The notes under the pieces are model-generated. The model saw only the letters and a program-made list of their open reading frames with translations. It had not been told where the DNA came from and did not search any database. A program made the position numbers and the translations under genes. Below are positions 37,701 through 61,700 of a DNA stretch of 64,000 nt, piece by piece (position 1 is the first letter of the stretch; each line of letters opens with the position of its first letter). Location: positions 97,092,001 to 97,156,000 of the forward strand of contig NW_026262723.1 of NCBI RefSeq assembly GCF_021869535.1. Reading direction: 5' to 3'. This DNA comes from Mytilus californianus. Lineage: Eukaryota.

Positions 37701-40700
37701 ATTGGCAGAAAGATTACTTGAGAGGAACAGCTATGGAGATGTACACAGAATATTTATCTAGTTCCTTTAATGGTATGACATTCCCAGAAGCTGCAGAGTA
37801 AGTATTGCATTAAATAATGCTGTTGTAGATTTAAGTGTTTATGCAAAGCTGTAATGTCCTTGAAATTCAGAACTTGGCTTGAAAAGTCTTTAAATCATAT
37901 TGCAGCATTGAAGGATTCTCAAAACCAAACGTGAAATTCTTTGATTTTAAAGCAGCCTGCTCTTGATCAAAACCTAATTTTGTGTTGAATTGATTAAAAT
38001 ATAAGAATTCTCCAACTTTTGTTTCAGAATTTGAAAGAAGATCACTAAAATCTTACCAGCATTTTCTATGAATTAAACCAGATGTTATCGAAACAGCAAC
38101 CAAGCAACACAAGCTAACCAAAATTATAAAAGATCTAAAGCTCAACATATAAAAGTAAGAAGATGTAGTATTATTGCTAATGAGACAAATATCCACCAGA
38201 AACCGAACGAAGAAGTTAACAACTATAGGTCACTGTATGGCCTTCAGAAATGAGCAAAACCCATACCCCATAGTAAGCTATAAATGTCCCCTAAATGATT
38301 AATGTAAAACGAGAAAACTAAGGGCCTGATTTATGTACAAAATAATTAATGAAAAATAAATATATAATTGCGCTGTCTCTGTTTGCTGCACTATCTTTTG
38401 TTTTCCAGTTTACATGTCTCTATTTTCAGATTATGTTTTTCCAAATTAGAACTACTATTACTGGCTATTGAAGTACGTACAGAAGATGGCAGGGAGAGCA
38501 CTCTAGCTATCAATCCTGGATCAAAGATTAAAATAGAAAATGCTACACAAGGATTTTTCATTGCTGAATCTGCTGAAGAAGTTAAAAGGTATATTATTGT
38601 AATTTAAAGCAATTGTCTTTTGAAATAGTGTTCATTCTATGTGACGTCATCAGGAATAATTTTTTCTTCGGGACGTCAAAATAGTGAATTAGAAAAAAAA
38701 GTGACATCATAATTAAGTTTGACCAAGAAAAATTGAGATCAAGGAACTACAGGTTGATTAAAAAAATGAATAACAGTCAGTTTGGGGAATTAATGAATAG
38801 ACTGAAAATTAAGATACATTCATTGATTTCCATATAAGGAGTTCACCATAAGAATATACCGGTGTAAACATGAGTGGTATTACTACTAGAAGACCCTTTT
38901 AAAATATAAATAAGTGCCAGTATAATAAGTTAATGTTAGGATTTGAAAAATTCTAAACAGTTTTAGCAAATTTTCCAGTTAATTAGTAATAACCCGAGAA
39001 AGTGAAGCAGTAGATGTGGGATATGACACATGAAATGACTTTGCTATTTACATATAGATAATGGAACTGTGATGAAATGATTAAAGCTGTAAATTTTCTC
39101 CTTGACAATATCTATGTATGTTTTGGCAATAAAGTTTATCGACAAGTTGTAGGTATTCCTATGGGCACCAATTGTGTCCCTTTAATAGCAGACTTGTTCC
39201 TGTATTGTTATGAATCACAGTTTATGGACAAACTCAGTAAAGATTCGTCTAAATTATATTTAATTGATCAATTTAAAAACACTTACCGTTACTGTGATGA
39301 TATTTTTTCTTTAAATAATCAAGATTTTTCTGGTTTTACTGCTGAAATTTGCCAAAAAGGGGGAGGATTGAGTGCTCACAAACATGTTTAACTCCCCCAC
39401 ATTCCTTATGTGCCTGTCCCAAGTCAGAGTCTGTAATACAGTGGTTGTCATTGGTTCATATCTGTCATATTTGTTTTTTGTAAATTGGTATTGTTATATA
39501 TTAGGTCGTTCGTTTCACATTTTTCATGTCGGGGCCTTTTATAGCCTACTATAAGGAATAGGTTGTTGAAGGCCGTACAGTGGTCTAGAATTGCTTACTA
39601 CCTCTTTATTTTAAGTCAAGTGAATAGTTGTCTCAATGGCAATCATACCACATCTCCTCATTTTTATATACAAATTTATATTCTTTTTAGATTTTTGGAA
39701 GTACATGTGTACTGGTAAATTATCTAACTAAACTAAATTGATATAGTCTTTTGTTCAATATATTTTATCATTTAATACACACTTCTATATTTGTTATTTT
39801 AGAGCCTTTTATTATTGTCAAGCCTGTCATGGAGCCCTTAAAGAAGCTAGGGCTATCAAAAAATGTCGTTGCAGACCATGTAAGTTTTATAAATAATGCA
39901 TTTAATTTATTTTTTATTTGGATAAAAATACCTCAACAGAAAATAGCACAGTAGGTGACATCAGCAATAATCATTACCTTAAAAGATCTTTATTCTAGAT
40001 ACATGGAGACCAGTTGATATCAATGTAAATGTTGAGTAAACATAAGACAGTAACACAAAACCATAAATAAACTAAAAAAAAGACACACCCTACATCATGC
40101 TTTATATGGACTAAGTCTAAGAAGAAGTATGAAAGAAGCAGAAGTGACTTTAAAAACAAAATACTAAAACTGTCAAAAACCTTACTTAGAATAAAAACAA
40201 GTCTGATAAAATTTCTGACTTGGTGAAAGGCACATAAGCATGTTGCAGGGTTAAATTGGTTTTCTGTGGAAGCTATCCTTTTTATCTTCATCATAAGGAA
40301 AAAAACTTATACAATGAGAAATACACAAATTAATACATTGAATATACCAACTTAAAAAAAAGATTGGATTAAATTCAGCTTTATAGGTACTCCATCCTCC
40401 CCATTGTCTGTTTTCTACCCTATGATGTATATAAATGCTTTTTAGTTTGGTATAGATTGCTCCAATCATACTATTTCACACACATAGAAAATGTTACAAA
40501 ATAAAACATTTCCTTGCGGAAATTTACAGTCAACATGGTAAGAAACCAGCTATTTTCGTTGAAAGCTAAAAAAACCCCTGATAAATAGAATGTTCGATGT
40601 TGTGTATAGTTACAGATTTATTTTTATAGATTCAGTGACATTGATATATGTCTTATAGATTGTTATAGCTGCAGTTAATTGATAAAAATAGATTTTTCTA

Positions 40701-43700
40701 TTATTTCAATGCTATTTATAGATGCTTTGTGTTTGATGTTTTGCTTTGTTGGTTATTAGATCTACCAAATGACAGGGTATACATGTAAATGGAATCAATA
40801 GTTCATGATCAAGTAATAAGGAAACCAATTTTTAGTTGTAGCACAGCTATTAATGGGAGGACATAGGTGCTCTATGTCATTTGGTAATATGTGTGGCATA
40901 GCATGAATAGTTTTGGTACATCTTGGCTTATGTCCAATCATATTCGTGTTTTCACCAAACCTTTAACTTTCTATAAACAAAGGTTATAATATAACTGTCT
41001 CTGAAAGTAAGATTTGTTTGCATGGTGTTAAGATTTAAATGGTTAACCTCTGCCTAATTTAAAGCTATTTCTAATTGTAAGATAACCTGTAAAAACAATT
41101 TCTATGACCAGATTCAATAAATATAGCAAGATTAATTAACACTTTTCAGGAATCTCATCACTTGTGTCTCTCAACAAAACTAAATATATGTTTTTCTTCA
41201 AAATTATAAGTTTATGTATTTGGGAAGATAAAATTCATGCATAATAGTTTTCCTTGAAAATACTATTACAGTAATATAATGTGGGTATTTGTATGTTTCA
41301 ATTTCTGTTAGCAGTATGTACTGTAGTCCATCAGACATAATTTCATATTTGGTATTTTCAAATTATAGAGAGGGAATAATCTGTTATTTTTCAATCCTGT
41401 GTGACGGGATTGCTTCCCTTCATTAGTAGATACTTAGTCAGCTGTAAGAGGTTGAGCTAAGGAAGTACTTCTTTAGCTCAGTCGGTATACACGCTGCCTT
41501 GTAACACAGAGGTCTCGGGTTCGAGTCCCGGTGGAGACATACGATTTTGCAAGTAGAATCATGCTCTCCGGTTACACCTGTTTAATTTTGTCCATGTTGA
41601 AGTTTTTGTAACAATTGATCTTTGAAGTTTTTTTAATTCATTGTTCAATTATCATTTTTGGAATTACCAAAGTGGCTTTTTAGAACACTTCTAAAAAAAA
41701 TAACTGTTTTGATGCCTGCTTTTGTAAAAATAACTTAAAAGCAAAACATCAAGTTCAGGCTTTATCAAGTTCCAAGTTTCAAAGGGAGGTAATTCTTTCA
41801 TTTTATTTTCTATCAGTGGCTTTATTCAAGAAAGGAGCAACAGCTGTTATAGGTTTGTTACCATTTCATGTTGTGTCTTTTGTCATCATTTTTTACTTAT
41901 GTTTATCTACCTATTTGCTTTACACATTTTCATATTTATTTAAGAGAAATGACTGGTGTAGGTCCAAAGTGGCTAATGTTTTCAAATGATTAAAGATTCA
42001 GTATTGTCAACTACTTTTAATGTTGTGTAATCTTAAAATGTTTTCAGAGAATAAACTTTATTTGTTAATTTAAGAAGCTTTTTGAAAAATATATGTTGTA
42101 TAAGGGAGCTACCATTTGATTTTTATGGGGGGGGGGGGGGCTAGGATAAAATTTGAAAAAAAGGCATGACAGGAGTTTTGAGTAAAAAAAAAAGGCAGGA
42201 TGACAATTTATGTCAAAAAAGTCAGGATAAACTAATAAAAAAAAAGGCAGGACCGAATAGAGTGAGAAATAAAAAGGCAGGACAGAGATTACGACTAAAA
42301 AAATGCAGGACAGAGATTACAACTAAAAAAATGCAGGACAAAATTTTTCATCCTAGCCCCCCATAAAAATCAAATGGTAGCTCCCTAAGGGGGTTTTCTA
42401 TTCTTAGGCTTTGGGATTTTTGCTTTTTGCATGCTTATGTCAGTTTCTGACAATTTAAAATATGCCATCTGCTAAGACAGCAACAAAAAAATGTTAACTT
42501 AATGTGAGTGTGTTTTTATGACAATTTTCAATCTTTCAACAACAACAACAAAATAAATTAAACAAAATAAAGAAAGGTTGAAGAAAATCAATTTCACAGA
42601 GATTTTTTAAATCTAAGGTTTATTTAACTAATGATTGGTAATATAATTGAAATGTTAGTATAACTTTTTTACATAAAATGAAAACAAGTTGTATCAAAGT
42701 TTGTTTTATTCCTGTAATTCTTTAAATTTTTGTGATATTTGTTACTAACAAACAGCACAGTGTGTGTGTATGTGTGTGTCTTGACAGCAGCAGCATATTA
42801 TAAATATTTATCACATAAAGCATATTATTGGCTGGTACTAAGCTTGAACTTTTAATGGTTGTAATTGATTATAAGCAGCTAAGAAAATAATTCTTCACTC
42901 TTTATGTTGTACATAAATTATGCATGCTTTTTATTTAATTTAAAAAAGAAGAGAGGTTAAGATAATTTTACAAAAGGTATATGATAAAAATGCAATGGAT
43001 TGAAGTTTGCTGTGTTTGCAAAACAGGCTTGGCTCTGTTTTATTTTGTCAGCTTTTCTAAATACTTTTTGCTGTATATAAACTTTGACAGTACTTTTGTT
43101 TCTCGTTTCCAGTTTTCTTGGGTTTGTCGTGTTTTTATGCCCCCGCCGTAGCGGTGGGGGCATTTAGTTTTACCCTTGTCCGTCTGTACGTACGTACGTC
43201 CTAAAATTGGTTTCCGTTCTCTAACTTGAGTTTGCCACAACCAAATGTTATGAAACTTATACACAATGCTTATTACCACAAAACACAGATCAAGTGTGAA
43301 TTTTGGTGGCGTCACTTTAAACGTTCTTGAATTATGCCCCTTTATAAATGGAAAAATTGCAAAATTTTTAGTTTCCGTTCTCTAACTTAAGTTTTCCTCA
43401 ACCAAATGTTATGAAACTTATACACAATACTTCTTACCACAAAACACAGATCAACTTTGAATTTTGGTGGCATCACTTTAATCGTTCTAGAGTTATGCCC
43501 CTTTATAAATGGAAAAATTGCAAAATTTTTATTTTCCGTTCTCTAACTTAAGTTTGCCTCAACCAAATGTTATGAAACTTATACACAATGCTTATTACCA
43601 CAAAACACAGATCAAGTTTGAATTTTGGTGGCGTCACTTTAATCGTTCTAGAGTTATGCCCCTTTATAAATGGAAAAATTGCAAAATTTTTATTTTCTTT

Positions 43701-46700
43701 TAAATATCAAGTAATTTTTAAAATTGGAGTTATCTTCCTTTGTCCATGATTATAGTTGAATCAACTACAATCAAGCTTTATACAATGCAATGTTTAATTT
43801 TGACTTCCACTGATAAAACACAGATCAAGTTGAATTTGGGTAGTGTCACTTTAACCATTATTGAGTTATGCCCCTTTATAAATCGAAAGATTGCAAAATT
43901 TTTAGTTTCCATTCTGTAACTTAAGTTTGCCCCAACCAAACATTATGAAACCTATACACAATCAAGTACAATTTTTTTGGTTTCCGTTTGCCTCAACCAA
44001 ATGTTATGAAACTTATACACAATGGTTATTACTACATAATACAGATTAAGTACGAAATTTGGTGGCAACACTTTTACCATTCTTGAGTTATGTCCCTTTA
44101 TAAACATAAAAATTGCTGAATTTTTTAGTTTGTCTCAACCAATTGTTATAAAACTTATACACAATCTTTCTAAAGTTATGTGTGTTTACAAATAGAAAAA
44201 TTTCTGAATTTTTAGTTTCTGTTCCCTTCTTAAGTTAGCCTCAACCAAATGTTATGAGACTTACACACAATGCGTATTACCACAAAACTCAGATCAAGTT
44301 CAAATTTGGGTAGCGTCACTTTTACCATTCTTCAGTTATGTCCCTTTTTAACTATATGATATGCAAGCAGGGGCATCATCTGTGTCCACATGTGGACACT
44401 ATCCACATTTATTTTTTTTTTATTTGTTTCAAGCTTCATAAACAAAAGACAGTGGCCAAGGGTATATAATTTCCAATTATCATTAAACTATGAAACATCC
44501 TCGTAACTACAATACCCTTCCCTTTTCACGAATGTGACCTACCGAATTAGACTATTTACCGGGTTTGTAAAAGCATAAGCAACACGACGGGTGTCACATG
44601 TGGAGCAGGATCTGCTTACCCTTCTGGAGCACCTGAGATCACCCCCAGTTTTTGGTGGGGTTCGTGTTGCTTAGTCTTTAGTTCTATGTTGTGTCATCTG
44701 TACTATTATTTGTCTGTTTGTCTTTTTATTTTTGGCCATGGCGTTGTCAGTTTGTTTTCGATCTATGAGTTTGACTGTCCCTCTGGTATCTTTCGTCCCT
44801 CTTTTGGCACTCGTCAAATACAAGTATTACCACAATACTTCATTTAACCATGTATATATAAAATGTATAGTACATTGTAAGTTATATTTCAGATTTTTGT
44901 TTTGTAGTTGTATACTTAAATTATAAAAAAGGAAATAAAATTAATAGCCGTTATGTATCTATGTGGACTTCTTTTTATATTGGGAAGATAACTTTCAAGA
45001 AGTAAAACCTGCATCTACCTAGTAAATTCCATATTTCATAATTTGAAGTTTTGTGAGTAATTTTGGATATTCATCCAACAAAATGTCACATTTTAGATAT
45101 TTGAAAATTTCAACAAATATGTATTAAAAAAAATAATTGTATAATTCTAAAATATTCCGATACAAGAAAATGTTTGATTTTACAATGAGGAATTTATATA
45201 AAAATTTATCAAACATTATATTCATTTTTTGATGAGGTGTTAAATTGAAACACTCAAAATTTTGTCAATAAAGATTTATGTTCCTTTTGATATTTTTTTA
45301 GTTTTTCTTTTAATATTTTGATAGAAGCTCCGCTGTTTCTATGAAAGAACAATGCATAATTCTACCACAATTGGAATAAGAATTTAAACAGTAACACTTT
45401 CTTTTTAAAACAGGGACACAAGCTTTGTTAAGAACTGGTGAGAGGCATGGGGACATATACATTTGTATAAGTCTACTCGAATGATTGTCACTAATTTGTT
45501 GTTACTAAGTGTCATTCACATAATGTCACTAATGGCAAAACACTATATAATGTTGTCATTAATTTTGACTTATTTAAAAGTATTTTTGTTAGTGCTAGCA
45601 AATTATTATAATTATACTACAGGGAACTTTGCAATAGCCGAAAGTGGTGAGATTTCAAGCATGTTCTGTTAGTGAATACTAATAGTCTAACAAACATACA
45701 TTTTGGAATGATGATTGTTTGTAACAGTGTGTTAAATTTCTATAACAGCTTCACATTGTTTGTAAGTTTATTAATTGTATTCTGAGCTTGGGAAAAATTA
45801 AGTGTACAGTTAAGTATGCATTCATTGTGTAATAAATGAGTGGTAAGTAACTGCTTTGTTCATTTTTCTTGTAAATATGCAGTTTATGTTGATAAAAGAT
45901 TTGAAGTATTCCCCTTTTAGAAGTATGTTGGGTGGTGAATGACTGAAATTCTGCCTTTGCCATAAACAGAAGGTTCCCCTAAAATTATTTTAAAATTCTG
46001 CTTACATCAATTATATGACCTGTTTCAGCTTTTGTTTGTAGGGATATAACAAGACAGTTTATTTTCAAATTGGATGAACTTTAGTAAGCATTATGGCCCC
46101 ATCTTGGAACATAGTTTTTACATGGACATCAACGAATATTTGACCAAAATCACATTTTGTAATTTGTATGAGAGGGCGTCGGGGAAAATTAGTTTGTTGT
46201 AACTAACTGTGTTTACCTCTTTAAATAAAGAATTTATTATTATTTTTATTAATTTTATTATTCCAAAATCATTTTCGAAGTTAACTGAATACCAGAAGTG
46301 ACTGAGAATTTTGGAACCTTTATGTTATTTCAAAATGAATATGTTTGGTTTCTTGATTAGGGTACTAGCTACAGACTTCACAGCGCCCATATTCTAAAAT
46401 CACCTTTTTTTTATCAGCATTTTTTGTTTGATTTAAACAATAAATTGCACAAACAACTTCTGCACATGAGCAGATATTCACTAAATATTTTTTCTTCTGA
46501 GACATTCAAAGATGTTCGCACAATTTATTTTATGTATTAAGGTGTTCAGTCAAACATTTTCACATTCAAACAAAATTAATTTATTTATTTCAGTTCCAAA
46601 TTTTGTGCCTTAATTTGTGTCTCACCTGCAGCTATTGAAGTATAATGTGAGACTTACAGATGATAATCAGGCAGCACCATAAACAATTTCTATGAGGTTT

Positions 46701-49700
46701 TATAGTTCAGAGTGAGAAGAATTGGTCCCATATTTTTGAAATGCGCATTATGGTTTGAAATTTCCATCTGTCCTGCCATTTCATTTTCATGGTTCAATGA
46801 ATAACTCATTAGGTGTTTTGATCAAATGATCTTTTTAGTAACTATGCGTACAAGATCAACTACATTTGGTGTTATAGAATCATTGAAAGGTGTACAATTC
46901 AATCAGATGGTTCCATTCACCTTGACCACGTTACTGTAATAGTTCATTGATAAACTTTAAATATCATAATGAGACAATAGATGCTAGTTATAGCTGAATT
47001 ATATTTGATTTATAGTGTCATTGCAAAGGGTACATATCCATATGACCTAGTTCACCTGCCCTCATTTTCATGGTTCAATGATGAGGTTAAAGTTTCTCAT
47101 TTACTATAAGCAGTTGGTGAACAATATGTTGTTTGTAGAATCTTGTTAGGTGAACACATGCATATAACAAGGCTCACTTAATTCTGACCTTGACCTTGTT
47201 ATATAGTCCATTGATCAACGTTAATTATTTTTATTAAAGACAGTTTCTCCTTAACTATCAGTTGTGAATCAACTACATTTAGTCTTCTGAATCCTGATGT
47301 TGTATACATACCCCTATGACAGGGTTCAACTGACCTTGCCCTTTATTATTACATATTATAAATATGATTACGACCTAAACACTTATTTGCAGTCAGTGTA
47401 TTATAGAATGCTTTTATATAGTATGTAACTGTATAAACCATGTTCAGCTTTAAATATACATATAAAAGAATGCTTGTCAAAGTAGAACTGTAAAAGTATA
47501 TTCATTAGTGGATGACAGATTCCACGAGTTGTGGAAAATACTTGCTTTGGGTGGTTTTACTTTATGGCTTCAAACTTTGCATTAAAAAGTCAACTTTAAT
47601 TACTAAAAATATAAAATTTTAGGGTCAAACTCAAATAAAAAAAAATGTCCCCAATGAACAAAAATACTTGTACTTTATTTACTAGTAGTTATATTGTAGT
47701 AACAGATTGCCTGTTAATATTATTATATTATAGCTTTGAATCGACTGAAACGTTATAAACGAACCAGAGTTGGTCTAGCTTGTGAGTTAAAAAAGCAAAA
47801 TATTGAACTAGTCATAGAGCTTCTACTAACCAATAACAAAATATAAAGTACATTAATGAGCCAGAATGCCACTTACTAACAAGTTAGATGATATATATAG
47901 AGGCATACTAACAAGCTAGACATAGATACATGCAGTCATATTGAGTAGTATATCTAATCACCATTTAATCACCCATCTTATACATACTTTGGGGTAGGTC
48001 AAATATATATTCACTAAAATTAGACTTATAGAACTTTAAATTTTGGATTCTCGCAAAACAAGGGTTATAGTATTCCTTCTCTTCTTCGTATTGGGTAAAA
48101 TTATATTATGCTGTTTTATCTAGGGTGCTTTGTAAAATAATCAATGTTACTACTACACAAACAACTAAATTTGATTCAAGTCAAAATTTTCTCTAGTGGT
48201 TTATTGTTTTTTTCATTTGGTGCATAACTGTTTTAAAAGAAATTTCTGAAAATTTGTTAAATAAGTTGTTAATGTGATGCTTGAACAGAGATCTTAGATG
48301 TGCATTTATGGCATCTAGTTTTGCTTACTAATAAATCATTCTTTACAACTGTAAACTGGTTTTATAGACAAATTAAATATTTCTCAGAATGGCATACATG
48401 AGAAGTAGCTCTGTGAATAAATAAATCATAAAAAGTTCTAAGTTGACAAAATAGGTGTTTTTGTTATGATCTACTGGTACATTTTGATCAATAAGAGGGT
48501 CGGCACAAACAGATACTCCACCTATATTGATTGTTTAGTTGTTGGAGTTTAATGCCACTTTCAGTTTGTAATTGTTGAGGAAGCATACACTATAACTGTA
48601 ATTTATATAATCCAGAAATTTATTTGAGTATCAGCAAAAGAAGAATAAATCTGCCGTTCTACATTGTTGATAGATAAATATACTAAAATACTCTCTCTGT
48701 CTACTTAACTGATTTTCATTATTGCAGTTTGAACTCTTTAGTCAAACCTATTATATCAGAATATGTTAACAACATTAATATATTTTCAGTATAAAACTTT
48801 TATTTGAACACATTTAAAGATATAAGATGAACCAACGCAAATTTCTTGAATAATTATGTTATGATATTCAGTAATTTAATAGATAAATTGATATGACCAA
48901 ACATGACTTTTTTCATGAAAAGCTAAATTATTTATGTGTGTATCAAATAGTTTGTGTTTAAAAAATATGTAATATTACTTGTGACCGAACTTTTAGACAT
49001 TTGTTTGTCTGTTTTAGCTGCAAATCCTATGATGAATAAAGAAAATAAAGAAAGAAGAACATCAACAAAAGTAAATGCTGCAGTGAATGCTGGGTAAGGC
49101 AATGTTTCAGGAGTTATTTCCCTTTTATCATACACTCTCTAGACATAATTATATGAAATTTAAAAAAAATTTGTAGTAAGAAACTGTCATCTTTGTTTTC
49201 TTACTGTTATATAGCAAAAACCATTTATATGTTGACCATTTTGCAAATTTGATTTCATCACTCAAAGTTTTTTAACAGCCCTTGCAACAATCTAAATATG
49301 ATTGGCAACTTGCAAGAAGTTGGTTAACATGTGAATTGATGACACAGCATAATAAGATGCTTTCATTGATATTTTATGTTTATTTTATTACAAATCTTTG
49401 ATATTGATCTATAAATTTGTGTTTCTTCTATGGCTGATGATGATTTTTTTTTTTAAATTTTATTGGCGGTTTTTGTAATGTTAATTTGTCTCAATTTTTG
49501 CAGTCCAGATGAGTTTGAAGAAAGTGAGGAAAAAATATCAAATGTTTTCTCCTTTCCTTTCGCTAAAGGGAAAAGTACTGCTTCCATTAAAGGTCCCAGA
49601 TTAGCAATGTAAAGATCAAGTAAAAAGCATGCAAATGTTTGATTTTGTACATGCAGTAGGCTGGAATGCTTATAGATGCTTAAAATATTGTTCTATAAGT

Positions 49701-52700
49701 TCTCCCTGCCATTAACATTATTTCAAGTCTTATATTGGAAACATAGTTAGTTTTTAATTCTCAAAATTAAACAAAATAATAAGCTGAATGATGATAGAAT
49801 AATATGGAAATGCCGGCATTAGAAGTTTTATTTTAAAATTTTGACTTTGAATTTCCAGTGTTAAAGGAAACCGTTGGTATGTTTATGTGATATTTGATCC
49901 TCTCCTGTCCAATAATAACTTTGGGACCTGCTAATATTCTTGAACACGCATGTTCTAATTTGTCCTATTATAAGCCAATTGTTAACAACACAGCACAGGA
50001 ATAAAAAGAGGTTATTAAGGAAGAGCAGCTTGCTTGTACATTACAGATTAAATGTTAGTTATCTCTTGTAAGAGTTAATTACCTTGTTTAAGCTCACCTG
50101 ACCAAAATAGGCAGCATGATCAAAACCATTAAGGAGTTACTGCCCTTAAATGATGATTTTTTGACAAAGTTATCTCCAAAACTATAATAGATAGGTAGAA
50201 ACTGTAAACAGCAAAAATGATCATCAATTTAAGAGCTACTAAAAAGCCAACATGACTGAATCCATGATTCTTTAATGAATGCTAAGAAATTTTGAAGTTT
50301 TATATTTCTTAAAATGAAACTAGTTGAAAACCTAACATATATGAATTTCCCCAGAAGAATTGACAGCTGATTGCAGCAGCATTGTTTAACATTCAGTTAA
50401 TACATATTACAAAAACACATACCGGTATATTCAGGGTTACACTCGAGGGCATAGGGAACATTTATAGCCTGGCAATGTAGACAATATCTGTTTAATGGGA
50501 ATTTGTGTACAGATCACAATAAAGAAAATGAAAAAAAAAAGCAGATTAATAACAAAGTTGGAAAAAGTTCTTGTAAGTGTACAGAATCTTTTCTGTTATT
50601 GTTATACAAAACCTGTTGAAGATGTTTTCTTACTAGAAGGGTAATTAACTCTTACAAGACATGTAATATTTAAGAGCAGCAGTCTAATGTTATTGTTGCA
50701 TGGTAGAATAGTATTTATGTAAAACCAAGGATTTGTATAATATTTGATTTGCTATACAAATCATTGGTAAAACTATAGGAAAATCTGTACGGTAAATGAT
50801 CTTGTTTGATAATGTTTGTTTGGTGTGTAGAAGATCTTATAATAATGTACATATTTGGTTAAGTAAGAGGTGTATTGTATGCTTACAACTGAGATATGCA
50901 GTGAGTGATGCACTCAGTGTCCATTTGTAAAATGGTTTTATATTTCAAATTTTGCAAGAGTTATCTCCTTTTTCCATTGGTATTTGCAAATAGTTTGACA
51001 TTTTATTTCTGCTAAACTCATATTACAAACTTAGATAAGATGTTTTTCCATGAAAATATAAAAGTTTACCATTCCATCCAAAATGCATAGAATATCTCGC
51101 CATTAACAGAGAAAATTCTTTCTATAAGTAAATCTTGTTATTATTCTTGAGGTATGAAAACATATTAAAGGGGAAAGACTACATTAGATAACAAATGTTA
51201 CTTTATAAGTCTTTAATATATCTTTACAGCAAAACTCATTTTCACATTTACTTTAAATTAAAAGATGAAATTATAATCATCAACTAAATGTATATTGAGA
51301 ATGTAAGGTATTACAAATCATACCCCGCGGAACAAAGTTGGGTAGGGTATAATGTTTGGACCCGTCCGTCCGTCAGCCTGTCAGTCCATCAGTCAGTCAG
51401 TCCACCTGTCAGTCCTCCCATCAGACTGTCTGCCAGTTATGTTCTTGTCATGACATCTCCTCTGAAACCACACAACAGAATTTCATGAAACTTTATAGAT
51501 AATAAGTAAAAACTATGTAGATGTACATATCAACAGGAAATCATAATTCAATTTTTTTTGGTAGGAGTTATGCCCTTTTGAATATAGAATTTTGGCCTTA
51601 TATTACTACTGCAATAGTTTGTCATCACAACTCCTCTGAAACCAAACAACAGAACTTCATGAAACTTTGTAGATAATTAGGACATACTATGTAGATGTGC
51701 GTATCCACCAGAAAGTTTTATCTGTTGACTTTTGTAGGAGTTATGAGTCTTTGAACTTAGGTGTCTTGTGAGATTTAGTTGGCCCAGTGACAAGTGACAA
51801 TGTGGGGGCGTGGGTTATGAGAGCATGCTCACAGAAGTTCTTTAATTATTTTAGTTCTTATGTAGTTATTATACTCTACTGTCAACCAATTCATAACACG
51901 AACATTAGTTGAAAACTGTCTAGTTTCATATATTTCCAGAAATTATAACTATCTGTAATTGAAAAAGTATACAAAGTACCAAAAATATGACTAGTTGTAG
52001 CTCTGATATTATCTGATACAGTTCATGAATACTGATTAACAACAGTCACATCTGGCTTCAATTACAACTCTTGGTAGCAAATCAATGCCTAAAAAAATGT
52101 AAAATAAATTTTATTCTCATATTGTGTACAATAACCTTTGTATAAATAAGACATATTTAACTCCATTGGTGTCCACTTTGTACAGGTTTGAATGTACCTT
52201 CAATAGTATTATATATTTACATGGTTATTTTTGACATCTTCAGGGCATTGGCACAGCTTTGGTCTAAAACTGCAAATAAAGAGTAAGAAAGACAGAAATT
52301 ATTATTTTTGCATATTTTTTTTTAAACATTTTAGATTTACTTATATTTAGTTATAATATTTGAAGCACATATCATACATGTTGTGAACTATAAGACATGT
52401 ACTGCTAAATTGATGTTCAGGAATTGATTTAGTCTTTTTTCAAAATCACACAATTATACACAAGTATTAGCAATGAATGTTTGTTTTATTTTTAGTTGTT
52501 GTTTGCATATTTATGAAAAAAAACATAAGTGCTAAAGACAGTAGGTGTAGAATTAAATTTAATTTTGAATTTGACATTCATTAGACAAATTTTTAAAGTA
52601 GTTTTGTGACAATAAACTCATTAGTTTTATTTATTTTATATTTTTATTTAATTTGTCTCCATCTTTAGTGCAGAATTCCTTCAATTGTCTGTTTTGCTAG

Positions 52701-55700
52701 GAGACATTGTTTTAGAATGTAATTTTTCTATTGTTTTTCATTTTGAGGACTAAATGCAATTATGTGTTGTTTCAAACATCAGCATGAAGTAGATATATTA
52801 GTCAATTTTTCTTTCTTTCTGCAATTTTTCATATCTCCATGAAAGAATATTTCATAGTTATTTCTAAGCTTTAAATGTGTTACCATGACACTTTTTGTTT
52901 TATTGTTTACAGTTTTTATGACTTAGGGTATGTATAAGATGACTGGCATAATAGCGGCATGATTTGACACATAGATGTACTTTGCTTCAGTGCACTGGAA
53001 AAGGAGCCTGCAGCATCTAAACATAGGGAAATGATTTCATTTTATCAAAGATATAGATAAAAAAAAGGCTTCAAATCATCAATAATTGTAAAACGCCTGC
53101 CAACATATTATTGTATACCATTGTCTTCAGTCCATCTAAATAAATGTCTCAAGTTTAATATAGAGTTTGCTCAGAGCTGTTATTCTAAAGTGTTTTTACA
53201 TCAATGGTCAAAATAAAGGGAGCTGGTGTATAATGTTTTCTTGGTACAGCTGTTCATAAGTTGGATAGTGATTGTAAGGAATTTATGAATCGGGTACTGT
53301 TAATTCAGAAATTATTGCATTCATTTATTATTCTGATTTTTGAAGAATGGACAAAAATGTGAGGTAAATTATTGCGATTTCTGAACCTTTCAAAAGTTTT
53401 ATATAGTCAAGCTCATACTGATTTTTATTTACTTTTGCCATTTGTCATGGAACTTTTTCTTAAAAAGATAACTCAGGTTTGTTTTTGCCCATTGAACATT
53501 AAAAATGTAGATGTATGATTACTTTGGGAAAGGCACATCACAATCTCATGGTGCAGCTGTTTATTATTATATATTTGGAATGTGCAAATAGTATAAATAT
53601 TTAGTATGAATTTAGATTGGCCTCTGTTATAAGAAGCATAACTATGTTAGCAGAAAACATGGGATTGATTATAGCATATGCAGACCTATATATATTTATG
53701 ATAACATAGTTTTAGACTGGAGCTTTAGAAGAAGATTTTCTATAGATTTATTATAGATTAAAAAAAGCATGAGCATCCACATAAATATATCTCATTGATA
53801 ACCATGATCAGATTTCTTTCAGTATAAATATCTTTAAACTTGTTCAGAAAATCAAAGACATTTTTATGGACATGAATGAACAAACTGCAGCATGTATAAC
53901 CTTTTATTTTTAAGAAGGACAAAATTTGTCTTATGCTTTAAGCATTATATTTTGAAAATTTGTAAAGAGGTAAAACTATTCCACAGCATTGAAAAAATAT
54001 TATTAAAGATGTATTGTCTACCATTTCAATTAACAATCTAGATAAATTGATCTATGATTACCTCTATATTTAGGCCTACTAGCCCAAGTAAACAACATTT
54101 ACCTCCCTTGGAGAAGGAACCTGTAGATACTTCAAATGATCAGAGTGTAGCTCCAGGAGAAGAACCAAGGAAGTTTGATTCCACCGGCATGTTCCACTGG
54201 TGTCCTTCACGTCCTTTGGAATCGGCTGTTATGGTAAGTTGGATTCTGCCGGCATGTTCCACTAGTGTCTTTCACATCCTTTGGTATCTGCTGTAATGGT
54301 CAGTTGGATTCCACTGGTGACTTTCACATCCTTTGGAATCTGCTGTAATGGTCAGTTGGATTCTACTTGATGCCCATCACATTCATTGGAATGAGCTTTT
54401 ATTGTGAATTTGATTGCATTAAAATCCATCACATTCATTGGAATCATCTGTAATAGAAACTTTGATTCTAATGGTGTTCATCTTGTCCATAGACATTATC
54501 ACTATTTGAGAATCTGAGACACTTGACCTTGAAGTCTGTGATACTTGAACTATTGATGTCATACAACAATCACTTTTTCTTTGTGGCCTCAGCCATTTTC
54601 TATTATGATATCAAAATTTTACGGGAACCTTGGTGATGTCCAGTATTGGCAGACAAATAGCGAAAAGGTGTATCGGTTAGTTTGATTCTACTTGTGTCTA
54701 TCATGTCCATTGGAATTTTGATTCTTTTCACAGCTGGTATACTGTTTTTGTCTTGCTTAAATGAAAGTCGCGGAAGGCGAAACATAAGTATTGCTTGGTG
54801 TCAAGTTTTCTGCTTAAGTTAGTTTGATAAGAACTACTTGTGATAGATCAATGATATTTTCTATAAAGTTGCATTTCTATCTATATATATTAGTTTGATG
54901 ACAATTTCAAGGCCCTCCCCCGTAGGTCATTGTCTAGCAACTTTCAATTAATAAACAATTTTCAATTTAAAGTTTTCTGCTTAAGTTAGTTTAATTGGAA
55001 CTACTTGTGATAGATTAATGATATTTTCTATAAAGTTGCATTACTATCAGTACATATCAGTTTGACAACATTGACTCCCTGCCCCCATAGGTCATGGTCC
55101 AGTGACTTTCATTAATTACCAATTTTCAATGTTAAGTTTTCTGCTTAAGGTAGTTTGATAGGAACTACTTACAATAGACAACAATATTTTCTATAAAGTT
55201 ACATTACTGTCTGTACATATAAGTTTGTTCACCATTTCGAGGCGCTGCCCACTAGTTCATGGTCCAGCGACTATGAATTAATCTGAAGTGTTGCTGTCCA
55301 TCAGATTGTCTTTTTCTGAATTTTATGCCAACAGGCGAGACATATCTTTGTGTCAATAGTTTATTCTGGTTAAGAGTCTTATGTATATGTATAATAATTA
55401 TGTTATAGTTCATAACAGAGCATCCATAGTTATCTTTTACAAATTATTGTTTAATGATTTATTGATTTTTTTTCAGGACCGTGACAAAGCTTCAATGACA
55501 GTTCTATGTAACCATGTTGTAGTTTGTTTATTTGCTGATGACAGATCTCCACTTATTGGTTTACGTAATCTTGTGATGCCTCTCAGAGCAAGCAATTTCC
55601 ATTACAAAGAGCTGAAAAATGTTGTGATAGTTGGAAATCAGGAATATTTAAAAAGAGAATGGAAAACACTTCAAAACTTTCCAAAATTATCTATTTTACC

Positions 55701-58700
55701 TGTAAGTTTTTCTTGTCCTTTGGTTATTGTATTGTTATTCATTATTGCATACTAATAACTATGTTATTCCTTGTAGTAATGCAATTCATAATATTAAAAA
55801 TTTAAATCTTTAAAATTTCTAGAAAACTTTGTAGAATGAGATTCACAGAATTAAAGTCAGTGTTATGTATGATAAGTGATAATTTTTTCCATTAAAGTTT
55901 ATAAGTGCATTCAAAATTGCAGAATGCATTTCATTTAAGCAAAAATAAATACACAAGTGTAATAGTCTGTGCCAAACTGTTTGAGGGTTTGTCTGACCGA
56001 AAAAAAAATTGGACCTTTTCTACTATATTTTTAAGTAAAAAATCTGTAAATTTCTGTCTGACCAAAAGATTTTTTGTCTGACATTTTGTCCGTCAGACAG
56101 AGTTTGGGATACACTAGTGTAAAAAATATTAAAGGAAAAGAATGTATAAAGAGTTTTATACCTAAATTGCTTTTTGCCTTGCTTATTTAATTTTTGTCAA
56201 AATAATTTTAGGGCCTTTCCCAAAAAAATAAATGATCTGAAATGAGTGTATTAGTTTTAAAGGTCTGATAACAATACTTTTTGGTTTAATCTTAATCTTT
56301 TGTATTCCAGGGTTCTCCATTGAATCGTGCCAATCTGCGGGCAGTGAATGTTAACCTCTGTGATATGTGTGTTATCATATCTGCTAAGGACAAGAATTTA
56401 GATGATCCACATTTAGTGGATAAGGAAGCCATTTTATGTTCATTAAACATTAAAGCAATGACATTTGATGATAGTATCGGTTTATTACAAGCTTCTGCAC
56501 AAGGAGTAGGAGCCGGAGGTATGTTAAATAAAAAATATTAGTCAAGAAATAGGACACCAAGTTTGCTTATTGTAAAAATTTATTTCAACCTTTTAGAGAT
56601 AGAAAACTATTGATTCACTACCAGTAAAATTCACTGTACTGTGGATATATTTTTGTGGAAACCAATATTTGTGGATTGAGGAAAACTTGTAGTTTCTTGG
56701 AATTTTTATTTTGTGGTTTTGCCAAAATCCGCATACAAATCTATATTAAATTTGTACTTCGTTGAACATTTAGATTTGTATAGTTAACCTGTACCCTCCA
56801 AATCCATGAAATTTGGTATCCCACGAATGATAATGAATCCGAAGTATACCCATCTTAGTGGATTTCACGGTATGGGGGAAAACCACATATTAACTACATG
56901 AAAATATACAATATTTCAGTCACTTTGATAGTACATTGTAGCTAAACATGAAACAATAAATTATAGGAACCCTCTAAATAGCAAAATTTTCTCTGACCAT
57001 GGACGGTCACATCAACAACAATTAATAAATCTGATATAAATTAATTGCAATCTTTTGTTCTGAGATATTCAAGATAGTGAAAGACTTGCAACATAAAACT
57101 CAGTCATGATCAGAAAAGTAGGTGAGACATTTCCGTGCCTGCACTATTGTTTTTATATTTAAGGATATATACAACTATTTTTTGCAGTGTAGCTTATCTA
57201 TGTTTATTATTTTGCAGGTTTCCTTCCACCTGGGTTTTCACCTATAGGCAGTCCAGCAAAACAGTCAAGGAGGGGTTCAGTGTGTGGTTCAAATGTTCCT
57301 TTAATTACTGAATTAGGTAAGTAGTTTTTGGTACAATATTTCTTGGAAGGCACATTGTTTTTTTTTAATTGGCTGGGGCTGAGAGAAACAGTTAAAATCG
57401 TCCCAATAAACAAAATAACGTGACGGTACCCAAATTGCACCTATTTTGGCAGTTTCACCTACATTTATTTATGATCAAGACAAAAGTTTCCATTCTGTGT
57501 TTATTTTGTAGATGTATCCTTTTTTTCTATATATTCACACCAATTTAATTTTGAATCCATATTGAATCGTAGAAAATGGGTTTGAACCGACCTCCAAACC
57601 ATCCAAAAAAATTGATTCTGTAATGAGGAGTACCTAAATTGCATCCATGCTTAAATTCACATCCTTAAAAATCGAATAACAGATTCATTTTTTAAGAAAT
57701 GGATGCTTGTAACATATTGTATTTGCTCATTTTTAAAAGATGACTCTTTGTGGACATTGCCATGCGATGTTTCCGTAGATTTTAATTTTTCCAATGAATA
57801 TTCATCTGTTGATATATACTGTGAACGTTTTGTGTATATTTAAATATATTTACCTATGTTGAAAGACTTGTATAATGTCAAATCATAAAAATACAAATTG
57901 TTTATAGTCTCAAAGAAAACTTGTACTATTTCAGCTGCTATTTTTGTTGAATAGGTGCAATTTGGGTACTGTGACGTTACCTGTTGTCTAATAAACTGTA
58001 TTTTTGTTACACAATTTCCTTGTTACAGATATCTGGCTTTTTCACCTTATATATTAATTTTAGTTATTGCAATGGTAAATTCTGCATTGTAAAAGTTTAT
58101 GGACTATTTAATGTTATTCATATTTTTGTTACCTAAACTTTCAGTTAGTTCAACATTTATTTTCATAAAAAAAATATGCATTTTTTTTTTCAGCGAATGA
58201 TTCCAATGTACAGTTTTTAGATCAGGATGATGAAGATGACCCTGACACACCTCTTTACATGACACAACCATTTGCATGTGGTACTGCATTTGCTGTTAGT
58301 GTACTGGATTCATTGATGAGTACTGTAAGTAGGGGAGATAACTCTCTCAGAAAAGACACACTTATAGTTTTAAATTGAAACCAGTTTACAGAATCTGTAT
58401 TTTCCATTTAAAAAGAAGTATGTTCTTTCAAATATTCTGATAATTGTGAACTTTGAACAATATGTATATATGCTTTGATTACATAAATTTGGTAAAATCT
58501 GTCTAGTTTGTACAATAAACATGTAGATATTCTTTTTTCCAACTCCTTTTGATCTTTAGTAGATGATTGATTGATTGATTATTGTTTGCTTAACATCTAG
58601 TGGCAATATTTCATGCAAATTTAGGACAAGAACAAATTTACAAAAATCCAGAAGTTATATTCTGTGAAGTGGGTCAGCAAGGATGTAGGTGGGAACTTTA

Positions 58701-61700
58701 GGTTGCCACTGAAGAAAAAAAGGTATATTATACAGTTGACCATTTTGAGAAAGATGCAGGAGGGTTGGCCTTAATACAGGCTATCTACGGACCCCTCAAG
58801 GAGCTGTTGCAAGAATTTTTTAACATGGAAAATGTCAATCAAAAACTTTAAAATATTACGAAGAAGGAGGTGTACTAGTCTTAATTTCCTCATTAATAAT
58901 GATAAGTGTATAGGAAAAGGAATTGTTTGGTAAAGATCAATGAGATAACAACCCAACAACACAAGCCGTTATAGTTATTAATGTCTCATTTACCTTGTTC
59001 TCAAATGCAGGCTCGGGGGGTATAATAATATTATCCATATATATGTGTAAATCTATATAAATGTACCACTTTACATCGTTTATACATTTTTATATATTTA
59101 CAGAGTTATTTTAATGACAATGCTTTAACATTAATACGAACACTGGTGACAGGAGGAGCTACACCTGAGTTAGAACAGATTCTTGCTGAGGGGGCTGGAA
59201 TGAGAGGGGGATACTGTACTCCTAGTGTGTTAGCCAATAGGGATCGATGCAGAGTTGCTCAGCTATCACTTTTTGAAGGACCACTCTCAGGGTTTGGGGT
59301 AAAATTAACATGTATAAAGACTTTGATATACATTCTTCAGCTCTCATTGAGTGTATATGATAAATAGTGAGGTTATTTTATACAACATGCCATTTTAAAT
59401 CTGCTTTTGTTGGGTTTGGGGGTTTTGGGAGATTCACAAAAATACCATTCTAGAGAAGTTGAAATTTCTTGAGCTGCTAGTTGAAGGGAAATTTCTTACT
59501 CAAGACTGGGTTTTTTTTATCAAATATTCCTCATGAACTGTGTCAGAACATGCTATATTTGTTTAATTACACAGAATATCAATAGAAATGATGAAGTTAA
59601 ACATTTGATTTAATTTCATTACTCTTTGGTTAGCAAAAACAGCAGCATTTCATAAAATCCATTTAAGATCAAATAACTTAGCACAGAAGTTAGCTTATGA
59701 AAACTTTATTTTTCAATAGTTAAATTGAAGTTATGAAAATTAACAAATGATATTCAATCGTAAGGTAAATTGACACAAACCATGCTTTGATGAAGATTTA
59801 ATATGTAGATGGCAGATCTTTTTTTCTTGTCAATCTTGTTTATCATTGTTGTATCATTTCCCTAAAAAAGTAGATCTGCTTTTAACATTGAAAATAACTA
59901 ATATAAACAATACTTCAAGCTTATGAATGTAACATTAAAGTTTCATTTTACATTTGTAACTTGTAAAACAGTACTAGTACTATATTGTATACATAGAATT
60001 TTCATATTTTAGATAAATTATAGAATTAATATTATCTATAAAAAAACATGTGTTGCAGGAAGAGGGAAGTTATGGAGACTTGTTCCTTTATGCACTAAAG
60101 AAGTTAGGAATACTTTGTATTGGTTTGTACAGATTCCGCGACACAAATGAAGTACAGACAAGTCCATCATCAAAACGATATGTCATAACAAATCCAAATG
60201 CTTCTTTTAAACTTTACTCAACAGACCAGGTTTGTCAAAGCACATTTATTGTGATGCTATACAGTAGAATCTGTCTTGATGGTTACCTTCCGCCATTTAA
60301 AATGTCACAGTTTCCCGAAGTATTTGGTTCAGTCTACTATTATTAAGTAATAGCAGTTGTAGTTCAGGAAAGGTTTTACTGGTATAGCCTTCTAATTTAT
60401 TTCTTTTTCTTGTAAACTGCATAAAAAACTTTGCATGATTTCATATTTGTTATTATAAACTGTTGTACATTTTGAATTTTTTTCTTTTATGTAAATGGTA
60501 ATTTGAATCAAAACAATGAAGACTTCAAAAACACAGACACAGCAAAGAGGGAGTCATATTTATATTGTATTAAATATGAACGTTTTTTCACAACATCCTT
60601 TAAATTAGTCCAACAAATATTTTTTTTTAATTCAGAATCATTCTTTAACATCATTGAAGCATCTATTATGCATTATGGTAATATTTTCAAATGGGTACAC
60701 TTAAACATTTTGATTGATTTAAAAAAACCATCCTAAACAATGGAAAGTTCACCATTGGCTTGACATTATTTTTATTTTGGGATACAAACAATGAAATTAC
60801 CCATAGTGCATTAGATTCTGAAATGGTGAATTGTTGAATGACTGACATACTCCAGACTTGGCACAGGCACATTAGTAATGAAATGAACCAGGTTTAAGGA
60901 ATGTCAAAAGTCCCACTTTTATCATAGTCCTTTCCAGTAAAAAGTTATCACCCAATTTATCTACCAGATATGCATCACGTAAAACTCAAAAGACAAATCT
61001 TGAACTTTAATCTAAGACACTGCTGTAAAATTGAATGTAGGAGTCCATCAAAAGATACATGATTCCCAGGGAAGGCACATTGAAAATGAAGTAACCATCT
61101 ATAGAAGCAATTTTAGAATTTCTCTTACCAAAAACTCCGAGCCCCAGATAAGTTTTTTTCAAAGTGCCTTTCCTGGGTTTCATGTATGTTTTTATGGAGC
61201 AGCCCTAAGGGACAAAGACTTAAGTTTTTATATTTACAGAAACAAGGAACTAAATCTATGTCCAAGTACATTATTGTAAGGACAGTTGTTACTAAGTTTC
61301 TAAGTTAATGGTTAAAACTGGCAAATTAATGGAGATCTTTTAAAAAATACTGTAATGGTCCTCCCTTAAAGAAACATGGCAATTATGAGATTTGAAAACT
61401 GGAAATTGTTTAACTTGATAAGTAGATGGCTGTAGAATAGAATTTTTTTTATAAAAATGTCATGAAATGATGTTGAAATAGCTAATTTGGGAAACTGCCT
61501 TTTTTTTTACAAGAATTGGCTGTTATAAAATACCCGGTACCTTTAAAACTACTATTTTTGATTATATGCTAACACATTTCATGGCATTGTTTTTAACTAA
61601 ATACATGTATCTTGCACCATTTTTCTTGATGTATGTTATATGCTTTTCTTATTCTATGCAGGTTTTCTGCCTAGTTCCATGCAATTTTTCACAAAGTTCA

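What the first reader, a model, noticed from the sequence alone, without database searches (positions are those of the whole stretch)
45414..52927. Combinatorial, probably Rbfox-controlled cassette and micro-exon array in the RCK1-RCK2 linker
Around one obligatory phase 1-to-2 exon (49018-49093) sit two phase-1 cassettes upstream (24, 24 nt) and three phase-2 cassettes downstream (105, 39, 15 nt). Each is a multiple of 3, is open in exactly the phase its position demands, and creates no stop at any junction combination, so up to 32 in-frame linkers are possible. Four of five have GCATG within 30 nt of the donor (+8, +13, +19, +30). My rough expectation is about 1% per 30-nt window at about 30% GC, and I did not see the motif after the constitutive donors I checked. 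Downstream (U)GCAUG is the established Rbfox inclusion signal. This linker is the known splice hot-spot of vertebrate (STREX) and fly Slo, but these peptides are unfamiliar to me.
Basis: partly seen in the sequence, partly recalled or inferred. Interest (0 to 1): 0.8.

Follow-up and report, generated by a model that had tools for sequence, protein, structure and literature searches.

The report
Alternative mini-exons in mussel BK channel
The flexible linker of a mollusc BK (Slo) potassium-channel gene holds a string of small optional exons, two shown by RNA, most followed by the GCAUG signal that Rbfox splicing proteins read; this is a new instance of a known theme, not a new kind of thing.

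Summary
The sequence observation holds. All five candidates exist at the stated places (C105 is 49504-49608, D39 is 52244-52282). All 32 combinations stay in frame. By a generic splice-site score they rank 1st and 3rd of 340, and 1st, 3rd and 8th of 182, in-frame AG..GT candidates.

- **15-nt exon:** it lies, letter for letter, between 49093 and 54074 in the main contigs of two same-species RNA-like runs.
- **105-nt exon:** it is joined exactly to 49093 in a contig of a sister species.
- **39-nt exon:** it has only weak, strand-consistent raw-read cover.
- **Two 24-nt exons:** A short collinear resemblance to Aplysia, Elysia and Nucella BK linkers (ALLRT/ALQRT) supports them.
- **GCATG:** it follows 4 of 5 cassette donors against 1 of 20 constitutive donors. 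It is the only outlier among all 1024 pentamers (p = 4e-7).

Rbfox control is plausible (mouse Kcnma1 is an RBFOX target) but untested, and none of the four sites has the optimal 5' U. Linker cassette arrays are already annotated in insect slowpoke. I could not check public mussel protein annotation.

The parts
39803..39879 (+). Constitutive exon ending RCK1 ([25 protein letters not shown]). It ends in phase 1 with a T.
   Evidence: Sequence; tblastn to wasp slowpoke P0073; PDB match to Aplysia BK residues 599-623.
41817..41852 (+). It is phase 1 to 1 and encodes (L)[11 protein letters not shown].
   Evidence: It is the best match in the intron to Aplysia LAMFKKGAAAVL (score 47) and to Nucella P0371. 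Adding it raises the PDB hit to Aplysia BK from 29.6 to 53.7 bits. The 9 letters upstream of 49018 in the X5 contig fit its 3' end, CTGTTATAG (inference).
45414..45437 (+). A24: a 24-nt micro-exon candidate encoding (G/W)TQALLRT.
   Evidence: Rank 1 of 340 in-frame candidates. It holds the only 5-mer of the intron with at least 4 of 5 identity to Aplysia/Elysia/Nucella ALQRT, which directly follows the X36 homologue. No RNA was laid on it.
45445..45449 (+). GCATG at +8 of the A24 donor (context GGCATG).
45623..45646 (+). B24: a 24-nt micro-exon candidate encoding (G/W)NFAIAES.
   Evidence: Rank 3 of 340. Weak collinear resemblance to gastropod GLAVEPDG / GLTIESDG. No RNA was laid on it.
45659..45663 (+). 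GCATG at +13 of the B24 donor (context AGCATG).
49018..49093 (+). 76-nt exon, phase 1 to 2 ([25 protein letters not shown]). It is present in every contig seen.
   Evidence: Contigs of X1, X2 and X5. Weak similarity to Aplysia NDKDKSRGTST.
49504..49608 (+). C105: a 105-nt cassette encoding [34 protein letters not shown].
   Evidence: X5 contig record 15 joins 49092/3 to 49503/4-49608 and ends exactly at 49608. Raw reads of X21 cover this bin (1.2) while the neighbouring intron bins are 0.
49627..49631 (+). GCATG at +19 of the C105 donor (context AGCATGC).
52244..52282 (+). D39: a 39-nt cassette candidate encoding [12 protein letters not shown]. No GCATG lies within 300 nt downstream.
   Evidence: Rank 3 of 182. 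X21 raw reads, on the gene's strand only, give 0.86 in its 184-nt bin, about 4 reads x 39 nt. Among the 20 non-repeat intron bins, only the three that hold C105, D39 and E15 are non-zero.
52913..52927 (+). E15: a 15-nt micro-exon encoding FYDL.
   Evidence: X1 (depth 18.4) and X2 (depth 27.2) contigs carry TTTTTATGACTTAG(G) between 49093 and 54074 (tables 5 and 5c). Rank 1 of 182.
52957..52961 (+). GCATG at +30 of the E15 donor (context GGCATG).
54074..54233 (+). Next constitutive exon, running from the end of the linker into RCK2 (PTSPSKQ...[21 protein letters not shown]). It starts in phase 2.
   Evidence: contigs. The X5 contig ends exactly at 54074.

Best explanation
This is the intrinsically disordered RCK1-RCK2 linker of a mollusc Slo/BK channel gene. 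It is built from a chain of short, phase-symmetric exons:
- X36, A24 and B24 lie before the 76-nt exon.
- C105, D39 and E15 lie after it.

At least some of them are used optionally, so one gene gives many linker versions (up to 64 in-frame on paper). The constitutive RCK domains do not change.

**Shown**
- E15 is spliced in between 49093 and 54074.
- C105 is spliced to 49093.
- X36 is a conserved coding exon.

**Inferred**
- A24, B24 and D39 are used.
- The choices are independent of one another.
- The GCAUG copies 8-30 nt behind four of the donors act as intronic splicing enhancers. Most likely an Rbfox-family protein binds them and helps U1 recognise these very short, otherwise weak exons in excitable cells.

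The likely functional outcome is a change of phosphorylation, trafficking or partner-binding sites in the linker. C105 adds an acidic cluster (DEFEESEE) and a basic Ser/Thr stretch. That outcome is also inference.
For: **Gene and position**
- tblastn of wasp slowpoke gives 20 collinear exons, and a 916-933 aa open CDS can be assembled.
- PDB hits go to Aplysia, human and Drosophila BK at the linker.

**RNA**
- X1 and X2 contigs run 49018-49093, then the 15 letters of E15, then 54074-54234.
- X5 record 15 runs 49009-49092 and then 49503-49608.
- Contigs end exactly at 49018 (X2), 30 nt upstream of 49018 (X1), at 49608 and at 54074 (X5). In a k=31 assembly that is what branching splice junctions give (inference).
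- In X21 raw reads, the only non-repeat intron bins with cover are the three that hold C105, D39 and E15 (1 in 1140 by chance).

**Splice-site ranks**.

**Conservation**
- X36 against Aplysia, Nucella and wasp.
- A24+B24 against the 16 Aplysia residues between the X36 and OBL homologues score 21. None of 2152 open intron 17-mers reaches this; shuffle p = 0.012.

**Motif**
- 4 of 5 cassette donors against 1 of 20 constitutive donors; binomial 5e-7.
- GCATG is the only outlier among 1024 pentamers.

**Knowledge**
- TGCATG is the one motif over-represented downstream of alternative micro-exons in human, with RBFOX CLIP support (PMC4317164).
- Kcnma1 exons rank among RBFOX HITS-CLIP targets in mouse (as cited in PMC5577181).
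- Insect slowpoke RefSeq isoforms show the same kind of combinatorial small cassettes right after KKCKCKN.
Against: - No read was laid on A24, B24 or X36, because the single read-laying run covered 48900-54400.
- D39 rests on about 158 read-bases in one run. Its junctions were not listed.
- C105 in the window's own species rests on about 2 raw reads. The contig cover in its bin in X2 is mostly explained by a repeat-derived contig.
- E15 is the main form in X1 and X2, so it may be nearly constitutive.
- Against whole gastropod linkers, the A24 and B24 similarity is not significant by shuffling (p 0.1-0.8).
- None of the four GCATG has the 5' U of the optimal UGCAUG.
- D39 and X36 have no GCATG.
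- Motif conservation in other species, tissue specificity and dependence on Rbfox were not testable.
- The tissues of the runs are unknown, and X1, X2 and X5 are only guessed to be RNA.
Confidence: 0.6

Rival explanations
1. The exons are real and alternative, but GCATG is not an Rbfox switch. Either another factor reads it, or it is a constitutive helper for very short exons without tissue regulation.
For: - None of the four sites is UGCAUG.
- E15, which has the motif at +30, is the dominant form in two runs. That fits a constitutive helper.
- D39 and X36 lack the motif.
- GCATG is about 2.9 times denser across both linker introns, not only at donors (17 in 14.1 kb against 21 in 49.9 kb).
Against: - GCAUG is the well-established Rbfox core.
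- Its place, within 30 nt downstream, is the classical enhancing position (PMC4317164).
- No other pentamer is enriched.
- Mammalian Kcnma1 is an RBFOX target (PMC5577181).
Confidence: 0.25
2. Only E15, C105 and X36 are true exons. A24, B24 and/or D39 are chance pseudo-exons with good-looking splice sites.
For: - No junction for A24, B24 or D39 was seen.
- 340 and 182 in-frame candidates exist by chance.
- The peptide similarity of A24 and B24 to gastropods is short, and weak by the shuffle test.
Against: - They are the top-ranked candidates on a score blind to GCATG and to homology.
- A24 and B24 both carry GCATG at +8 and +13.
- A24 holds the only ALQRT-like 5-mer among 6388 in the intron, at the collinear place.
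- D39's bin is one of only three non-repeat intron bins with raw reads, on the correct strand.
Confidence: 0.2
3. The short exons are mostly constitutive. The array is a finely split but fixed linker, and the apparent alternatives are rare splicing noise.
For: - E15 sits in the main contigs.
- Gastropod cDNAs and gene models carry homologues of X36, A24 and B24 together.
Against: - The X5 contig goes X36 to OBL directly (inferred from the 9-nt fit) and includes C105. The X1 and X2 contigs go OBL to E15 without C105 or D39.
- Contigs break exactly at exon edges.
- Elysia lacks X36 while Nucella and Aplysia have it.
Confidence: 0.12

Closest known systems
Insect slowpoke linker splicing (RefSeq isoforms of Polistes, Vespa, Vespula; Drosophila slo)
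   Same: - Same gene and same intron position, directly after KKC(K/R)C(K/R).
- Same phase, with a split codon fed by a T.
- Several small in-frame cassettes, including a 7-aa one, are combined freely.
- The segment LATFRKGVRAVQMV is the homologue of X36.
   Different: Apart from X36, the cassette sequences are unrelated. The mussel has a second group of cassettes just before the PTSP... exon. I did not examine regulatory motifs in the insect genes.
Vertebrate KCNMA1 linker splice site carrying STREX, and RBFOX regulation of Kcnma1
   Same: - The insert site lies right after ...KKCGCKR, the same place as X36, A24 and B24 (alignment; the position of STREX is from my own knowledge).
- Kcnma1 exons are RBFOX HITS-CLIP targets (PMC5577181).
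- Linker exons control trafficking (PMC2906319).
   Different: - STREX is a 58-59 aa cysteine-rich insert. The mussel cassettes are 5-35 aa and have no cysteine cluster.
- There is no sequence homology.
- The DDxxDxxxI export motif of the vertebrate linker is not kept in mussel or Aplysia.
RBFOX-enhanced alternative micro-exons (Li et al. 2015, PMC4317164)
   Same: Exons of 51 nt or less carry the Rbfox core motif in the first tens of bases of the downstream intron. The motif is absent from constitutive exons of the same gene.
   Different: - That class was defined in mammals with the full TGCATG, CLIP data and tissue data. Here there is only the GCATG core and no binding or tissue data.
- C105 is not a micro-exon.
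Aplysia californica BK channel cDNA (PDB 5tj6 and others) and gastropod gene models P0371 and P0372
   Same: The linker is collinear:
- LAMFKKGAAAVL corresponds to X36.
- ALQRT corresponds to A24.
- PGLAVEPDG corresponds to B24.
- NDKDKSRGTST corresponds to the 76-nt exon.
- A 4-residue FPEK stands where E15 gives FYDL.
   Different: There is no counterpart of C105 or D39 in those sequences. Only X36 is significantly similar. The exon structure of the gastropod genes was not available.

Membership tests
Slo1/BK channel alpha subunit gene | A K+ pore with a GYG filter, followed by RCK1, RCK2 and the calcium bowl, in one collinear protein | tested here: met
   The assembled CDS contains TVGYGD, the RCK1 and RCK2 blocks and [13 protein letters not shown]. 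It is 55-93% identical, exon by exon, to wasp slowpoke P0073, which carries PF03493 and PF22614. PDB hits are BK channels only.
Alternatively spliced cassette exon | Both the included and the skipped form are seen in RNA | tested here: inconclusive
   - C105: included in the X5 contig, absent from the X1 and X2 main contigs. This criterion is met across two species.
- E15: only the included form was seen directly; skipping is inferred from contig ends.
- D39: cover only.
Rbfox-enhanced exon | (U)GCAUG in the proximal downstream intron | tested here: met
   GCATG stands at +8, +13, +19 and +30 of four donors. It is absent for D39 and X36. None has the leading U.
Rbfox-enhanced exon | The motif is conserved in related species | not testable with these tools
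   No mytilid genomic sequence could be reached. The metagenome scan gave only distant animals, and the loci L016-L018 are short and distant.
Rbfox-enhanced exon | Inclusion depends on Rbfox protein and is higher in neurons and muscle | not testable with these tools
   The tissues of the runs are hidden, and only one read-laying run was allowed.
SRRM4/eMIC-dependent neural micro-exon | Length 3-27 nt with a UGC element close upstream of the 3' splice site | tested here: not met
   The lengths fit (15, 24, 24). In the 60 nt upstream, only B24 has a TGC, at about -30. E15 and A24 have none (output).
STREX insert | A cysteine-rich insert of about 59 aa at the site after CGCKR | tested here: not met
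   The position is the same, but the mussel cassettes at this site are 8-12 aa, have no cysteines and have no similarity to the human chains in the PDB.

The most novel reading that the evidence does not exclude
Rbfox control of the Slo/BK linker is ancestral to bilaterians. The same RNA-binding protein reads GCAUG behind linker cassettes in molluscs and mammals, although the cassettes themselves have been replaced. A regulatory link would thus have outlived its target exons. The mollusc array, with four motif-bearing micro-cassettes in 8 kb, would be a compact system in which to test that.
Probability: 0.3. Interest if true: 0.6.

Novelty: new member of a known kind. Interest (0 to 1): 0.42.

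Why it matters
BK channels set firing and muscle tone. Their linker is where vertebrates and insects tune trafficking and kinase control by splicing.

What this locus adds:
- Molluscs appear to do the same with their own set of tiny exons. At least part of that set (X36, probably A24 and B24) is shared by bivalves and gastropods.
- The exons carry a clean Rbfox-type signature.

Practical consequences:
- Exons of 15-39 nt are routinely missed by gene prediction, so mussel Slo models and any electrophysiology built on one 'canonical' cDNA will under-describe the channel.
- The locus is a convenient test of whether the Rbfox code works in Lophotrochozoa. The paper searches run here turned up no study on that.

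Tried and rejected
**Database and locus searches that gave nothing useful**
- **Word search, spliced peptide:** a 103-aa peptide (OBL+C105+D39+E15+start of the next exon) found no candidate of 57-180 aa.
- **Representative search:** the 55477-55701 exon gave mostly genomic ORF fragments and one full-length wasp protein. There was no mussel entry, and the best identity was 85%.
- **Profile word searches:** two searches used a wasp backbone plus mussel exon rows (A5, A6) to reach annotated mussel isoforms. The 120 rows shown were filled by arthropods, with a few gastropods, an annelid and nematodes. No bivalve appeared. I could therefore not check whether public mussel annotations already list these cassettes.
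- **Metagenome scan:** the exon 54074-54233 hit only distant animals.
- **Contigs behind P0002 and P0016 (L016-L018):** they are too short and too distant to test conservation of E15 or D39.

**Readings tested and dropped**
- I first thought A24+B24 were the homologue of the Aplysia/insect LAxF(K/R)KG..AV segment. The scan showed the real homologue elsewhere in the intron (X36), so I dropped that idea.
- Homology of C105, D39 and E15 to any fetched Slo linker is not significant.
- An eMIC/SRRM4-type upstream UGC signature is not present.
- Alignments A1-A4 were discarded because short rows were scattered.


Full report
**What the locus is**

The + strand of the window carries most of a Slo/BK channel gene.
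- tblastn with a full-length wasp slowpoke protein (P0073, found) gives about 20 collinear exons from 1.7 kb to 60.2 kb.
- With canonical splice sites these assemble into an open CDS of 916-933 residues. It contains the TVGYGD filter, both RCK domains and the calcium bowl.
- The finding lies between exon 39803-39879 ([25 protein letters not shown]) and exon 54074-54233 (PTSPSKQ...[11 protein letters not shown]). PDB searches align these ends to residues 599-625 and about 700-724 of the Aplysia BK channel and to the matching places of human BK.

**The observation**

All five candidates are in the sequence. My reading of the exact limits of two of them is C105 = 49504-49608 and D39 = 52244-52282.
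- All are multiples of three and open in the phase their position requires. All 32 combinations translate without a stop.
- By itself that is weak evidence. The two introns hold 340 and 182 AG..GT segments of 9-150 nt that are also in frame and open.
- With a generic splice-site score that knows nothing of GCATG or homology, however, A24 and B24 rank 1st and 3rd of 340. E15, D39 and C105 rank 1st, 3rd and 8th of 182.

**RNA evidence (one call allowed, laid on 48900-54400)**

The run search with the exon-rich stretch 54000-60400 returned two groups of runs.
- Runs of the window's own species held 16-17% of the words, which is the exon share of that stretch.
- Runs of a close relative, 'organism B', held 11%.

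Laying X1, X2, X21 and X5 gave the following.
- **E15:** in X1 and X2 a contig (depth 18.4 and 27.2) runs through 49018-49093, then TTTTTATGACTTAG plus one G, then 54074-54234. Those 15 letters are E15 exactly. The micro-exon is real and sits in the dominant form in these samples.
- **C105:** in X5 (organism B) a 254-nt contig joins 49092/3 to 49503/4-49608, the predicted C105 junction. It ends exactly at the last base of C105.
- **X36 to OBL:** the same contig is aligned 9 nt upstream of 49018, onto ctgttttag. That matches the 3' end of exon X36 (CTGTTATAG) in 8 of 9 letters and matches none of the other upstream exons. I read this contig as X36-OBL-C105, which is an inference.
- **Contig ends:** contigs also end exactly at 49018 (X2), exactly 30 nt upstream of it (X1) and exactly at 54074 (X5). 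In a 31-mer graph this is what alternative neighbours produce. This too is an inference.
- **Raw reads (X21, stranded):** among the 20 bins that are neither repeats nor constitutive exons, only three have cover. They are the bins holding C105 (1.2), D39 (0.86, about 4 x 39 nt) and E15 (0.41, about 5 x 15 nt). All of it is on the gene's strand. The chance of hitting exactly those three bins is 1 in 1140.
- **Limits:** junction rows for these few reads were not listed. A24 and B24 lay outside the stretch and remain untested by RNA.

**A missed exon and the upstream cassettes**

While testing whether A24+B24 resemble the Aplysia linker, I scanned all open peptides of the intron. A far better match appeared at 41817-41852.
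- Its limits are ctatcag|TGGCTTTATTCAAGAAAGGAGCAACAGCTGTTATAG|gtttgt.
- It is 36 nt, phase 1 to 1, and encodes (L)[11 protein letters not shown].
- This matches Aplysia LAMFKKGAAAVL, Nucella MFKKGAAAVL and wasp LATFRKGVRAVQ.

With X36 in place the mollusc linkers line up as follows:

| Mussel exon | Mussel peptide | Aplysia |
|---|---|---|
| X36 | [12 protein letters not shown] | LAMFKKGAAAVL |
| A24 | TQALLRT | ALQRT |
| B24 | NFAIAES | GLAVEPDG |
| 76-nt exon | [11 protein letters not shown] | NDKDKSRGTST |

- Elysia has ALQRT-PGLTIESDG at the same place and, like the mussel, a Trp right after CKCRP.
- The A24/B24 resemblance is short. Against the 16 Aplysia residues at the collinear place the spliced peptide scores 21. 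None of 2152 open intron 17-mers reaches that, and the next best overlap B24. A24 holds the only 4-of-5 match to ALQRT among 6388 5-mers. The shuffle p is 0.012.
- Against whole linkers the resemblance is not significant.
- I rate A24 and B24 as probable exons (about 0.75), skipped in at least the X5 transcript.
- C105, D39 and E15 have no detectable relatives. At the place of E15, Aplysia has FPEK where the mussel has FYDL.

**The GCATG signal**

- GCATG occurs 38 times on the + strand of the window. Seventeen copies lie in the 14.1 kb of the two linker introns.
- It stands at +8 (A24), +13 (B24), +19 (C105) and +30 (E15). D39 and X36 lack it.
- Among 20 constitutive donors, only the one after 54233 has it within 30 nt. 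There it is part of a tandem copy of the exon's own ...ACCGGCATGTTCCAC... tail.
- Fisher p = 0.0019. The binomial is 5e-7 at the window frequency and about 8e-6 at the local intron frequency.
- In an unbiased scan of all 1024 pentamers at +7..+34, GCATG is the single outlier (p = 3.7e-7). The next ones (p at least 0.003) mostly overlap it.
- The enrichment is therefore real and specific.

Its meaning is inferred.
- GCAUG is the Rbfox core.
- TGCATG is the only motif over-represented downstream of alternative micro-exons in human, with CLIP support and the known rule that downstream binding enhances inclusion (PMC4317164).
- Mouse Kcnma1 exons rank among RBFOX HITS-CLIP targets (PMC5577181).
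- Against this, none of the four sites has the 5' U. I had no tissue, binding or motif-conservation data.
- An SRRM4-type upstream UGC is not evident.

**Comparison and novelty**

- The 120 hymenopteran slowpoke isoforms returned show 33 different linkers. They are built from small cassettes inserted directly after KKCKCKN, and one cassette is only 7 residues long.
- Vertebrates use the same site for STREX (my own knowledge), and their linker exons control trafficking (PMC2906319).
- The kind of thing is therefore known. What is new is the mollusc set of exons and its very clean GCATG pattern.
- I could not reach any bivalve protein record, so the cassettes may already be in public annotations.

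**Verdict**

| Claim | My estimate |
|---|---|
| Real multi-cassette splicing array | about 0.9 |
| E15 is a real, spliced exon | certain |
| C105 | 0.9 |
| D39 | 0.7 |
| A24 and B24 | 0.75 |
| X36 is an exon | 0.95 |
| Rbfox-type control | about 0.55 |

Noticed in passing
window 54171-54367: The last ~65 nt of exon 54074-54233, with its donor, are tandemly repeated into the intron. TRF finds a period of 65 (2.2 copies, 84%), then a period of 52 (2.1 copies). The second copy has an in-frame TAG. It may be a decoy donor or pseudo-exon, and it explains the only GCATG found after a constitutive donor.
   Followed up: partly
window 50004-50371, 51292-51843, 53132-53499: Repeats inside the second linker intron are very heavily represented in the RNA-like runs of both species (summed word depth in the thousands). 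They show many internal joints and many variant letters. They are transposon-like and unrelated to the channel mRNA.
   Followed up: no
window 39803-39879: The acidic ER-export motif DDxxDxxxI, reported as conserved from flies to man (PMC2906319), reads GALKEARAI here and ANVSDVRQI in the Aplysia BK structure sequence. Molluscs lack the two aspartates that are essential in human BK. The optional C105 exon adds an acidic cluster ([10 protein letters not shown]), which might substitute for it. That last point is pure speculation.
   Followed up: partly
window 38409/38430 and 57218/57248: There are two pairs of in-frame alternative acceptors, 21 and 30 nt apart. In each pair both sites score well and both give an open CDS. 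They may be further small splice variants in RCK1 and upstream of the calcium bowl.
   Followed up: no
window 39880-54073: GCATG is about 2.9 times denser across both linker introns (17 in 14.1 kb) than in the rest of the window (21 in 49.9 kb). Copies lie 131 nt upstream of E15 and 184 and 307 nt upstream of exon 54074.
   Followed up: partly
P0151-P0269: RefSeq lists up to 50 slowpoke isoforms per hymenopteran species. Their linkers differ by free combination of 7- to 23-residue cassettes right after KKCKCKN.
   Followed up: partly
window 49018-49093: The constitutive 76-nt exon encodes KERRTSTK, which contains an RRxS-type kinase consensus. Aplysia has KSRGTSTS at the same place.
   Followed up: no
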